Source of the DNA: Euprymna scolopes
Lineage: Eukaryota
DNA: 64,000 nucleotides
Reading direction: 5' to 3' (one strand)
NCBI GenBank assembly: GCA_053919585.1
Contig: CM132784.1
A program made the position numbers and the translations under genes. Below the pieces are notes generated by a model that saw nothing but the letters and a program-made list of their open reading frames with translations, did no database searches and was not told the origin of the DNA. Positions 44,407 to 45,509 of the stretch are shown piece after piece. Within the stretch, counting starts at the first letter, position 1. Each line of letters starts with the position of its first letter.

Positions 44407-45077
44407 GAGCAGTTCCAAGCCCAGTGTCCACTCTCACCGCAACGGTAACACCGTGTTCCACGTTTTCGACAGTCCCTTGCAAGGTGGCCTTTAACATTGC
44501 ATTTGAAACAGGTCACGTTAACAGGATTATTCTGGGCCCTGTTGTTGGGTGAGCGTGTGGCCGCAACCACATCCTGATTTTGTTCGCCAGTCGTCGTCAA
44601 AATTCTCGCTCTCGACATTAGCTCCCCCATGGTCAGGGCTTTGATGTTCGGCACCTGTTGAAGAGCAATTGAGATGGTGTCAGGGAATCCAGTGACAAAA
44701 ATTAATTTTGTGAGTCTCTCTGAGCTTTCTCCTGTGAATCCGGCCAATCCAACCAACTGCCTGATTTTGTTGGCGTACACATCCACACGTTCACCAGCCC
44801 ATCTAACCATAGTTATTTTTCTATATGCTGCAAACGCGTCATCAGTAAATGCCTCCTTTAATCGAGCCTCAATCTGGTCTATTTTCTTTTGATCGTCCTC
44901 CTCCATTTCCATGTAGAGGGCCAGCGCATCGCCTTCCAGGTATAAAGGTAGCAGACTCGCTACGTCATCCACCTGCTGAAGTTGTGCGACAAGTCTCACT
45001 TTTTTCAGCCACGCTACAACATCTCCCTCGCCAGAGAACGGCTTGATAATATCACTGCTTATCCGCACCTTCGCCAT
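44379..45077 (-). CDS. gag: Gag (232 aa) with two CCHC zinc knuckles
   Basis: ATG at 45077 (MAKVRISSDIIKPFSGEGDVVAWL); CFKCNVKGHLARDC and CYRCGESGHWAWNC. Confidence 0.92.
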   Translation of the reverse strand: MAKVRISSDIIKPFSGEGDVVAWLKKVRLVAQLQQVDDVASLLPLYLEGDALALYMEMEEDDQKKIDQIEARLKEAFTDDAFAAYRKITMVRWAGERVDVYANKIRQLVGLAGFTGESSERLTKLIFVTGFPDTISIALQQVPNIKALTMGELMSRARILTTTGEQNQDVVAATRSPNNRAQNNPVNVTCFKCNVKGHLARDCRKRGTRCYRCGESGHWAWNCSGNEQGEDA

Positions 45078-45083
45078 ATTCGG

Positions 45084-45095
45084 GCCGAAATAGCT
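45084..45095 (-). promoter_or_regulatory. Atypical primer-binding site complementary to the 5' end of tRNA-Phe(GAA)
   Basis: The element strand reads LTR|AGCTATTTCGGC; its complement GCCGAAATAGCT equals nt 1-12 of the conserved animal cytosolic tRNA-Phe as I recall it. Confidence 0.7.
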
Positions 45096-45509
45096 TGAAA
45101 CAAAAATGTAGTAGGCAAAAAAAAAATAAATAAATAAATGTTCTGTCAGCAACAGTACAACTTCAAAATAGTCAATATCGCCCACCTCCAGAAGAGAGGG
45201 AATTCCTGTCCGTGATAACCGTGGTAAAAGAAGACACACTCCAATCGCCAGAAACACCCACACACACAGTTTGCAGGACACTGCCGACTCGTCTCTGGCC
45301 TCCTGCTTTTATAGTGGCCGGGAATTATCCATTTGCATAATCACATGAGACAGAAACGTGATTTTCCGAGAGTTGCATGGGGTAAATGCTAATAAAACCC
45401 CCCGGACGCCATCTTGGAATTCTCTTTTTCCCCCCAACTGGTGACACAACAGACATACCCGAGGTAAGCTCTTTTTCCCCTCATTTTAGTTATTGCTGCT
45501 TCTGCTACA
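45096..45509 (-). repeat. 5' LTR (414 bp)
   Basis: Direct repeat of 40915-41328 with one visible substitution; TATAAAAG on the minus strand at about 45305-45313. Confidence 0.95.

What the first reader, a model, noticed from the sequence alone, without database searches (positions are those of the whole stretch)
45070..45100. LTR retrotransposon apparently primed by the 5'-terminal 12 nt of tRNA-Phe rather than a tRNA 3' end
Seen: directly after the 5' LTR the element reads AGCTATTTCGGCCCGAAT-ATG(gag), with no TGG start. The complementary strand is GCCGAAATAGCT (45084-45095) and runs with zero gap into the TG of the LTR. Established: canonical PBSs pair with the tRNA 3' CCA end; known exceptions include half-tRNA(iMet) priming (copia, Ty5) and self-priming (Tf1). 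From memory, animal cytosolic tRNA-Phe(GAA) begins GCCGAAAUAGCUCAGUUGG. The match covers exactly nt 1-12 and stops at the LTR edge. Inference: minus-strand synthesis is primed by a 12-nt 5' fragment of tRNA-Phe, cut in the D-stem by a host nuclease or the element's RNase H. This would be a priming mode I do not recognise, though I cannot check the literature. The site also overlaps a short inverted repeat (TTCGG-G-CCGAA) beside the gag ATG.
Basis: partly seen in the sequence, partly recalled or inferred. Interest (0 to 1): 0.9.

Follow-up and report, generated by a model that had tools for sequence, protein, structure and literature searches.

The report
Retroelement primer site matching tRNA 5' end
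A young, very abundant retrovirus-like mobile element in this mollusc genome, and its relatives in barnacles, crabs, prawns and whipworms, carry next to the left repeat a 12-base primer site that pairs with the first 12 bases of a host tRNA (tRNA-Phe here) instead of a tRNA 3' end, which points to a way of starting reverse transcription that I could not find described.

Summary
The element lies on the minus strand (LTRs 45509-45096 and 41328-40915, 413/414 identical, 5-bp duplication GAAAT). The 12 bases directly after the 5' LTR (45095-45084, AGCTATTTCGGC) are the exact complement of nt 1-12 of the host's tRNA-Phe(GAA).

The host genome holds 658 exact copies of that tRNA 5' end and none of three other variants tested. 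The pairing stops at tRNA nt 1 on one side and at the LTR edge on the other.

Three families in this genome, only about 65% alike in pol, share the 12-mer with unrelated flanks. The genome has 7114 such junctions against 13 for a control. Relatives keep AGCTAT-NNN-GGC, varying mainly at tRNA positions 4-6:
- barnacle: Phe type;
- two decapods: CTA;
- two whipworm families: CGA;
- one further crab family: CCG, the complement of the first 12 nt of human tRNA-Lys3.

Animal-type tRNA-Phe genes with the CTA and CGA variants exist in metagenomes. Self-priming and a canonical 3'-end site are excluded.

No primer was seen directly, and the tRNA-Phe of decapods and whipworms could not be read. I found no description in the searchable literature. 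The scan had already noted the same thing on another piece of this genome (s1-244830).

The parts
45510..45514 (-). Target-site duplication GAAAT, upstream copy
   Evidence...ggaaat|TGTAGCAG; the same 5 bases follow the 3' LTR.
45096..45509 (-). 5' LTR, 414 bp, TGTAGCAG...GTTTCA. It holds a TATAAAAG box at 45313-45306 (a putative promoter, inferred).
   Evidence: 413/414 identical to the 3' LTR, with TG..CA ends.
45084..45095 (-). Primer binding site AGCTATTTCGGC, the exact complement of nt 1-12 of host tRNA-Phe(GAA), with zero gap to the LTR
   Evidence: Conserved in 12 lineages. Duplex energy -18.7 kcal/mol.
45079..45089 (-). Short inverted repeat TTCGG-C-CCGAA that overlaps the 3' half of the primer site; function unknown
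   Evidence: Similar small repeats occur in families B and C. Not tested statistically.
44379..45077 (-). gag, 232 aa, two CCHC zinc knuckles
   Evidence: PF00098, E 4e-11.
44400..44406 (-). Candidate -1 frameshift heptamer G GGA AAC, in the gag frame, 18 nt before the gag stop. pol is in the -1 frame.
   Evidence: Read; frames. Inferred, not tested.
41305..44418 (-). pol open frame, 1037 aa: protease, reverse transcriptase, DUF7047, one RNase H, H2C2 zinc finger, integrase core
   Evidence: Pfam. Structure model with pLDDT 91.6, whose best match is the CaMV RT-RNase H.
41329..41342 (-). Polypurine tract AGATCAGGGGGGAG, abutting the 3' LTR
   Evidence: The same ..CAGGGGGGAG|TG is found in relatives.
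40915..41328 (-). 3' LTR
40910..40914 (-). Target-site duplication GAAAT, downstream copy

Best explanation
This is an intact, recently inserted LTR retroelement of a deep Ty3/gypsy-like lineage. Its marker is the Pfam domain DUF7047, and it has a single RNase H.

The minus-strand primer site does not pair with a tRNA 3' end. It pairs with the 5'-terminal 12 nucleotides of a host tRNA: tRNA-Phe(GAA) here and in most relatives, and a tRNA-Lys(UUU)-type 5' end in one crab family.

The proposed mechanism has three steps.
1. The first 12 nt of the tRNA, freed from the acceptor and D stems (probably with help from the zinc-knuckle Gag), anneal to the site.
2. A cut after nt 12, at the edge of the 12-bp RNA duplex, gives a 3'-OH exactly opposite the first base after U5, and DNA synthesis starts there. 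The cut is made either by the element's own RNase H, as Tf1 does on its own RNA (I put this at about 60:40), or by a host nuclease.
3. Plus-strand strong-stop synthesis later copies the short primer and runs off at tRNA nt 1. This would explain why the site is exactly 12 nt long, why it follows the host tRNA's acceptor stem, and how it could switch from Phe to Lys.

Shown: the complementarity, its exact limits, its conservation, the restricted variation and the matching tRNA 5' ends.

Inferred: the primer itself, the cut and the nuclease.
For: - 12/12 complementarity to the host tRNA-Phe, bounded by tRNA nt 1 and by the LTR edge.
- The host has 658 exact tRNA-Phe 5' ends of this type and none of the TAG, TCG or GGA variants.
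- Three host families about 65% alike in pol, with unrelated LTRs and leaders, share the 12-mer directly after the LTR, with their own duplications.
- The genome has 7114 junctions against 13 for a control.
- Relatives read as follows:
  - barnacle AGCTATTTCGGC;
  - Petrolisthes and Macrobrachium AGCTATCTAGGC;
  - two Trichuris suis families AGCTATCGAGGC;
  - a second Petrolisthes family AGCTATCCGGGC.
- Information is 1.66 bits per column inside the 12-mer and 0.23 downstream. The distance to the gag ATG varies from 0 nt to more than 24 nt (36 nt in family B), so this is not a translation signal.
- Animal-type tRNA-Phe(GAA) genes starting GCCTAGATAGCT and GCCTCGATAGCT, each with a fitting 3' strand, exist in metagenome contigs.
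- GCCCGGATAGCT is the start of human tRNA-Lys3 (PMC8715211).
- No TGG-type site follows any of these LTRs.
- LTR-to-site pairing is no better than with shuffled LTRs: -9.4, -10.4 and -10.7 against shuffle means of -10.1, -11.0 and -10.1 kcal/mol. The tRNA 12-mer gives -18.7.
- PolyA RNA-seq assemblies of the host hold the element.
Against: - No primer, strong-stop DNA or 12-nt tRNA fragment was observed. All runs available were assembled contigs without read ends.
- The tRNA-Phe of decapods and Trichuris and the tRNA-Lys(UUU) of the crab could not be read, because run names are coded and their genomes cannot be searched. Co-variation with the host is therefore plausible but not shown.
- Elements cluster by host in the pol tree, so shared variants could also be inherited.
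- Two lineages from unnamed assemblies carry AGCTATTCCGGC and GGCTATTCCGGC, for which I found no tRNA.
- A cut inside the D stem after nt 12 is not a known tRNA fragment end (my own knowledge).
- No further tRNA-to-genome pairing was found that could hold a whole tRNA in place.
Confidence: 0.68

Rival explanations
1. The conserved 12-mer is a cis-acting signal with another role, such as packaging, dimerisation or a protein binding site. Its likeness to tRNA 5' ends would then be a by-product, and minus-strand synthesis would be primed in some other way.
For: No primer has been seen. The 12-mer overlaps small inverted repeats in three families. Elements cluster by host, so the variants could be inherited.
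Against: - The block abuts the LTR end with zero gap in all 12 lineages, which is where a primer's 3' end must sit.
- It ends exactly at tRNA nt 1.
- Variation is mainly at acceptor-stem positions 4-6. Four of the five variants of those positions equal known tRNA 5' ends, including a change of three adjacent bases that gives the tRNA-Lys3 start.
- No other candidate primer site exists near the LTR.
Confidence: 0.1
2. The site pairs with the tRNA 5' sequence, but the working primer is neither a cleaved mature tRNA nor a pre-made host fragment of it. It could be another host RNA ending in ...AUAGCU-3', for instance a transcript of a tRNA-derived repeat. Or an uncleaved tRNA could prime from an internal 2'-OH, as retrons do.
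For: The complementarity alone does not say which molecule supplies it. tRNA-Phe genes stand in huge tandem arrays here. The metagenome tRNA-Phe genes of the GCCTAGA type carry a conserved trailer, which hints at unusual tRNA-linked transcripts.
Against: - The pairing stops exactly at the mature tRNA 5' end and does not run into the gene's upstream flank.
- The same design occurs in hosts from three or more phyla, where only the tRNA itself is shared.
- 2'-OH priming is unknown in LTR elements (my own knowledge).
Confidence: 0.12
3. Tf1-type self-priming: the 5' end of the element's own transcript folds back on the site and is cut to give the primer.
For: Primer length (11 nt in Tf1, 12 here) and the lack of a TGG site resemble Tf1. 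A note from another window reports BEL/Pao elements of this genome with a site that matches their own LTR (s1-244822, not tested here).
Against: No copy of GCCGAAATAGCT with up to 2 mismatches lies in the LTR. The best LTR-to-site duplexes in families A, B and C are no better than with shuffled LTRs, and the longest exact complement is 0, 5 and 7 nt.
Confidence: 0.03

Closest known systems
copia-type priming by a 5' fragment of initiator tRNA-Met (copia; also reported for Ty5 and Tca2). From my own knowledge: Kikuchi et al. 1986, not checked here.
   Same: The primer is thought to be a piece cut from the 5' part of a host tRNA, not the intact tRNA's CCA end. The primer site does not start with TGG.
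   Different: In copia the fragment is about 39 nt and only its 3' part, in the anticodon stem, pairs with the site. Here the whole 12-nt 5' terminus would pair, the cut would fall in the D stem, and the tRNA is Phe (or Lys), not initiator Met.
Tf1/sushi self-priming (Levin 1995; cited in PMC7472051, seen)
   Same: A very short 5'-terminal RNA segment (11 nt there, 12 nt here) pairs with the site, and a cut at the duplex edge would make the primer. The site length equals the primer length.
   Different: Tf1 uses the 5' end of its own transcript. Here no such complement exists in the LTR and the partner is a host tRNA.
Canonical tRNA-Phe primer sites of some endogenous retroviruses, which pair with the 3' 18 nt of tRNA-Phe (my own knowledge)
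   Same: The same host tRNA species.
   Different: The opposite end of the tRNA; 12 nt rather than 18 nt; no TGG start.
Ty3/gypsy (Metaviridae in the wide sense) and Caulimoviridae RT-RNase H architecture
   Same: Gene order PR-RT-RH-IN, a CCHC Gag, TG..CA LTRs and 5-bp duplications. The structure model aligns over its whole length with the CaMV RT-RNase H (TM 0.68).
   Different: No match to the Ty3-type Pfam RNase H profile. The RVT_1 and rve scores are weak and the clade marker is DUF7047. The nearest solved sequences are retroviral integrases and RTs, and only weakly.

Membership tests
LTR retrotransposon, Ty3/gypsy-like | Two LTRs with TG..CA ends, flanked by a short target duplication | tested here: met
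   414-bp LTRs, 413/414 identical, duplication GAAAT.
LTR retrotransposon, Ty3/gypsy-like | gag with a zinc knuckle; pol in the order protease, RT, RNase H, integrase | tested here: met
   Pfam hits in that order.
LTR retrotransposon, Ty3/gypsy-like | Ty3-type RNase H (Pfam RT_RNaseH) placed directly after the RT thumb | tested here: inconclusive
   One RNase H directly after the RT, as in CaMV and Ty3. It matches PF00075 and PF13456 only weakly and does not match the Ty3-type profile.
LTR retrotransposon, Ty3/gypsy-like | Primer site complementary to a tRNA 3' end (TGG...) | tested here: not met
   No TGG start in any of the 12 lineages. The site is complementary to tRNA nt 1-12.
copia-type half-tRNA priming | Site complementary to the anticodon-stem region of initiator tRNA-Met | tested here: not met
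   The site matches nt 1-12 of tRNA-Phe(GAA).
copia-type half-tRNA priming | The primer is a fragment cut from the 5' part of a tRNA | not testable with these tools
   Needs sequencing of the primer. Only assembled contigs were available.
Tf1/sushi self-priming | Site complementary to the first bases of the element's own transcript | tested here: not met
BEL/Pao | Peptidase_A17 protease and BEL-type RT | tested here: not met
   The protease matches the retroviral type RVP. There is no PF05380 in this protein or in 120 relatives.
Troyka (PMC12440569) | 3-bp duplications and CG..CG termini | tested here: not met
   5-bp duplications and TG..CA ends.
Odin / Lokiretroviruses / Retroviridae (PMC9040795) | Dual RNase H: a tether domain followed by a second RNase H | tested here: not met
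   The 471-residue model holds the RT plus one RNase H. It aligns end to end with the CaMV RT-RNase H of 470 residues.

The most novel reading that the evidence does not exclude
A clade of LTR retroelements spread over at least three animal phyla starts reverse transcription in a distinct way: its own RNase H cuts an annealed host tRNA at the edge of a 12-bp RNA duplex, a Tf1-like cut made in trans. The 12-nt 5' piece is the primer, and the site is re-copied from that primer in each cycle. The site would therefore track the host tRNA's acceptor stem and could jump between tRNAs that share nt 1-3 and 7-12 (Phe to Lys).
Probability: 0.35. Interest if true: 0.9.

Novelty: new variant of a known kind. 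Interest (0 to 1): 0.8.

Why it matters
Textbook accounts give three ways for LTR elements to start minus-strand DNA: a tRNA 3' end, an internal part of initiator tRNA-Met, or the element's own 5' end. A site that pairs with the extreme 5' end of tRNA-Phe would be a fourth.

It is carried by thousands of young copies in one genome and by relatives in other phyla, so it clearly works well. Several consequences follow.

- **Annotation.** LTR annotation tools look for tRNA 3'-end sites. They would mark these elements as lacking a primer site.
- **Host defence.** Defence by 3' tRNA fragments that target primer sites would not see this clade. 5' tRNA fragments would, which gives them a possible new role as primer or decoy.
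- **Enzymology.** An RNase H that cuts an RNA-RNA duplex with a host tRNA would be of enzymological interest.
- **Experimental access.** The system is open to direct test in cephalopod tissue, where the element is present in polyA RNA libraries.

Tried and rejected
- **Self-priming.** No complement of the site lies in the LTR. Rejected.
- **Extra tRNA-to-genome pairing.** I looked within 150 nt either side of the site. Nothing exceeded shuffled tRNA, and the method is crude for long sequences.
- **Reading other hosts' tRNA-Phe.**
  - Their genomes cannot be searched.
  - Loci from them hold no tRNA.
  - Runs that hold the GCCTAGA-type tRNA-Phe come with coded organism names.
  - The metagenome contigs that carry these tRNAs have no long reading frames to place them.
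- **Separating host tracking from descent.** In the pol tree the elements cluster by host, so the tree cannot decide.
- **Transcript ends from RNA data.** Only assembled contigs were available. They show presence, not starts or ends.
- **Trichinella copy L075.** Degenerate, no LTRs, not usable. Petrolisthes L200: no LTR pair found.
- **Naming the clade.**
  - The atlas search gave unnamed clusters.
  - No paper mentions DUF7047.
  - Troyka and Odin do not fit.
- **Literature.** Ten searches found no report of a primer site complementary to a tRNA 5' end. Subscription journals and Repbase reports are not covered, so an earlier description cannot be excluded.
- **Lys(CUU)-type junction family in this genome.** One hit, equal to the control.
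- **Consensus line.** The protein alignment tool prints a majority line by itself. I did not use, keep or report it.

Full report
**Anatomy.** The finding lies in a complete LTR retroelement on the minus strand of the window.
- Two 414-bp LTRs (45509-45096 and 41328-40915) differ at one position and have TG..CA ends.
- They are flanked by the 5-bp duplication GAAAT.
- Between them lie gag (45077-44379, two CCHC knuckles) and a pol frame of 1037 codons in the -1 frame (44418-41305).
- pol carries a retroviral-type protease, RT, the Pfam domain DUF7047, an RNase H, an H2C2 finger and an integrase core.
- A G GGA AAC heptamer in the gag frame lies 18 nt before the gag stop.
- The polypurine tract AGATCAGGGGGGAG abuts the 3' LTR.

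**The observation.** Directly after the last A of the 5' LTR come AGCTATTTCGGC (45095-45084), then CCGAAT, then the gag ATG. The complement, GCCGAAATAGCT, occurs once in the window.

The host genome (5.9 Gb) holds 658 exact copies of GCCGAAATAGCTCAGTTGG. ARAGORN calls the sampled ones tRNA-Phe(GAA) starting at that G (L001:1447-1519:-).

The pairing covers nt 1-12 and is bounded by the mature 5' end of the tRNA on one side and by the LTR edge on the other. The tRNA gene's upstream flank does not continue the match.

**Not a damaged copy.**
- The family is very young and large. Forty scored copies are 99-100% identical over LTR, site and gag, out of 1304 candidates.
- 29 of 30 sampled copies have the intact 12-mer.
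- A protein search with a whipworm relative recovered two further families in this genome, only about 65% identical to this one in pol DNA. Their LTRs and leaders are unrelated.
- Both have AGCTATTTCGGC directly after the LTR, with their own duplications. Family B reads TG..CA|site with GAACC or CTTTT. Family C reads TG..TA|site with GTTTT.
- The genome holds 7114 exact [C/T]A+AGCTATTTCGGC junctions, against 13 for the backwards control.

**Relatives elsewhere.** Pol homologues with the same domain set occur in Trichuris, Trichinella, Petrolisthes, Macrobrachium, Amphibalanus and many unnamed assemblies. Where both LTRs could be found, the 12 bases after the 5' LTR are as follows.

| Host | Locus | 12 bases after the 5' LTR |
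|---|---|---|
| Amphibalanus | L074 | AGCTATTTCGGC |
| Petrolisthes | L041 | AGCTATCTAGGC |
| Macrobrachium | L073 | AGCTATCTAGGC |
| Trichuris suis, family 1 | L042 | AGCTATCGAGGC |
| Trichuris suis, family 2 (57% alike in Pol) | L199 | AGCTATCGAGGC |
| Petrolisthes, second family | L201 | AGCTATCCGGGC |
| Unnamed assembly ERZ25084518 | L196 | AGCTATTTCGGC |
| Unnamed assembly ERZ25084518 | L198 | AGCTATTCCGGC |
| Unnamed assembly ERZ26052449 | L197 | GGCTATTCCGGC |

L201 has 100% identical LTRs and the duplication CCGCG.

Over the 12 lineages, the 12 columns carry 1.66 bits on average. Nine of them are invariant or nearly so. The 24 columns downstream carry 0.23 bits. The gag ATG lies from 0 to more than 24 nt away, 36 nt in family B.

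Variation sits mainly at the three columns that pair with tRNA positions 4-6, in the middle of the acceptor stem. The one exception is the first column in L197.

**Do the variants match tRNAs?**
- A scan of metagenome contigs for GCCT[A/C]GATAGCTCAGTTGG found, besides bacterial tRNAs, animal-type tRNA-Phe(GAA) genes. They lack an encoded CCA, end in T-run terminators, and have a body like the host's. They begin with GCCTAGATAGCT or with GCCTCGATAGCT, each with a fitting 3' acceptor strand.
- The host genome itself has none of these variants and no GCCGGAATAGCTCAGTTGG.
- The CCG variant is the exact complement of GCCCGGATAGCT, the start of human tRNA-Lys3(UUU) as printed in PMC8715211.
- This genome has the related Lys(CUU)-type start GCCCGGCTAGCT in more than 1200 copies, but no element junction of that type.

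Four of the five variants of positions 4-6 are thus the 5' ends of documented tRNAs. A three-base change that lands exactly on another tRNA's 5' end is hard to explain unless the site is read against tRNAs.

I could not show that decapods and whipworms themselves have the matching tRNA-Phe. Elements cluster by host in the pol tree, so descent and host tracking cannot be told apart there.

**Alternatives.**
- *Self-priming of the Tf1 kind.* It needs a complement of the site at the start of the transcript. There is none within 2 mismatches. The best LTR-to-site duplexes of the three families are -9.4, -10.4 and -10.7 kcal/mol, equal to shuffled LTRs. The tRNA 12-mer gives -18.7.
- *A canonical site.* No TGG-type site follows any of the LTRs.
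- *More tRNA pairing.* No further pairing between the rest of the tRNA and the leader stood out.
- *Another role for the 12-mer.* Its position at the exact point where the primer's 3' end must sit, and its end at tRNA nt 1, speak against it.

**Mechanism (inferred).** The simplest reading is that the first 12 nt of the tRNA anneal to the site and a cut after nt 12 supplies the 3'-OH.

By analogy with Tf1, I favour the element's own RNase H. In Tf1 the element's RNase H cuts its own RNA at the edge of an 11-bp duplex (my own knowledge; Levin 1995 is cited in PMC7472051). A host nuclease is the alternative.

Plus-strand strong-stop synthesis would then copy the primer and run off at its 5' end. 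This would set the site's length at 12. If, as in retroviruses, one strand of the new site comes from the primer (PMC7472051), it would also explain tracking of the host tRNA and the Phe-to-Lys switch.

The zero gap between CA and the site, and between the polypurine tract and TG, implies blunt cDNA ends, as in Ty1 (my own knowledge).

**Placement.**
- The structure model of pol residues 150-620 (pLDDT 91.6) aligns end to end with the CaMV RT-RNase H, and with retroviral RTs up to their connection domain. There is therefore one RNase H and no tether.
- That rules out Odin and retrovirus architecture (PMC9040795).
- The 5-bp duplications and TG..CA ends rule out Troyka (PMC12440569).
- The protease type rules out BEL/Pao.
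- By sequence the nearest solved proteins are retroviral integrases and RTs, and only weakly.

I file it as a deep Ty3/gypsy-like lineage marked by DUF7047.

**Expression.** PolyA RNA-seq assemblies from the host hold the element at high contig depth. Contigs cannot show transcript ends, and DNA carry-over is not excluded.

**Novelty.** Ten full-text searches found no description of a primer site complementary to a tRNA 5' end. The library lacks most subscription journals.

An earlier agent of this scan reached the same reading on another piece of this genome (s1-244830). I re-derived it independently. I add:
- the Lys-type crab family;
- the host counts;
- the self-priming control;
- the information profile;
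- the single-RNase-H model.

The closest known systems are copia-type priming by a 5' tRNA fragment and Tf1 self-priming. This combines features of both and is a member of neither.

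Noticed in passing
L201:2655-2667 (Petrolisthes contig): A second crab family of the clade has AGCTATCCGGGC after its LTR, the complement of the first 12 nt of human tRNA-Lys3. 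This looks like a switch of primer tRNA within the same 5'-end mode.
   Followed up: partly
L197:2503-2514 and L198:2765-2776: Two lineages from unnamed assemblies carry GGCTATTCCGGC and AGCTATTCCGGC. I found no tRNA with the matching 5' end GCCGGAAUAGC, and it is absent from this genome.
   Followed up: partly
window 45079-45089; L062:560-583; L043 (reverse strand) just after the primer site: The 3' half of the primer site can pair with bases just downstream. Family A reads TTCGG-C-CCGAA, family B TTCGG..9 nt..CCGAA, and family C TTTC-GGC-GAAA. The downstream arm imitates the tRNA's own 5' strand and might mask the site.
   Followed up: no
G000:C28:101706348-101722569 and G000:C18:104175678-104221030: Very long tandem arrays of tRNA genes: tRNA-Phe with a 219-bp period and Lys(CUU)-type genes with a period of about 498 bp. 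They amount to hundreds of copies.
   Followed up: no
L077:386-422, L183, L185, L195 (metagenome contigs): Animal-type tRNA-Phe genes of the GCCTAGA type are followed by a conserved trailer of about 30 nt (..CCCCAGGTTAGCCCCGGGGGTCGG..) before the T run. This suggests a tRNA-linked second RNA or a tRNA-derived repeat.
   Followed up: no
L043, L046, L047 (family C of this genome): The LTRs of family C end in TA, not CA, yet have clean 5-bp duplications and many young copies.
   Followed up: partly
window 44400-44406: The heptamer G GGA AAC lies in the gag frame 18 nt before the gag stop, with pol in the -1 frame. It is a candidate frameshift site.
   Followed up: no
window 39057-47551: Another first-stage note (s1-288599) describes inverted arms, a hammerhead ribozyme and a truncated GIY-YIG nuclease around this stretch. 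If so, the LTR element is a later insertion into that structure.
   Followed up: no
window 37735-39097, 47526-47648, 49857-49985, 56467-56595: Long (AT)n and (AC)n microsatellites recur through the window.
   Followed up: no
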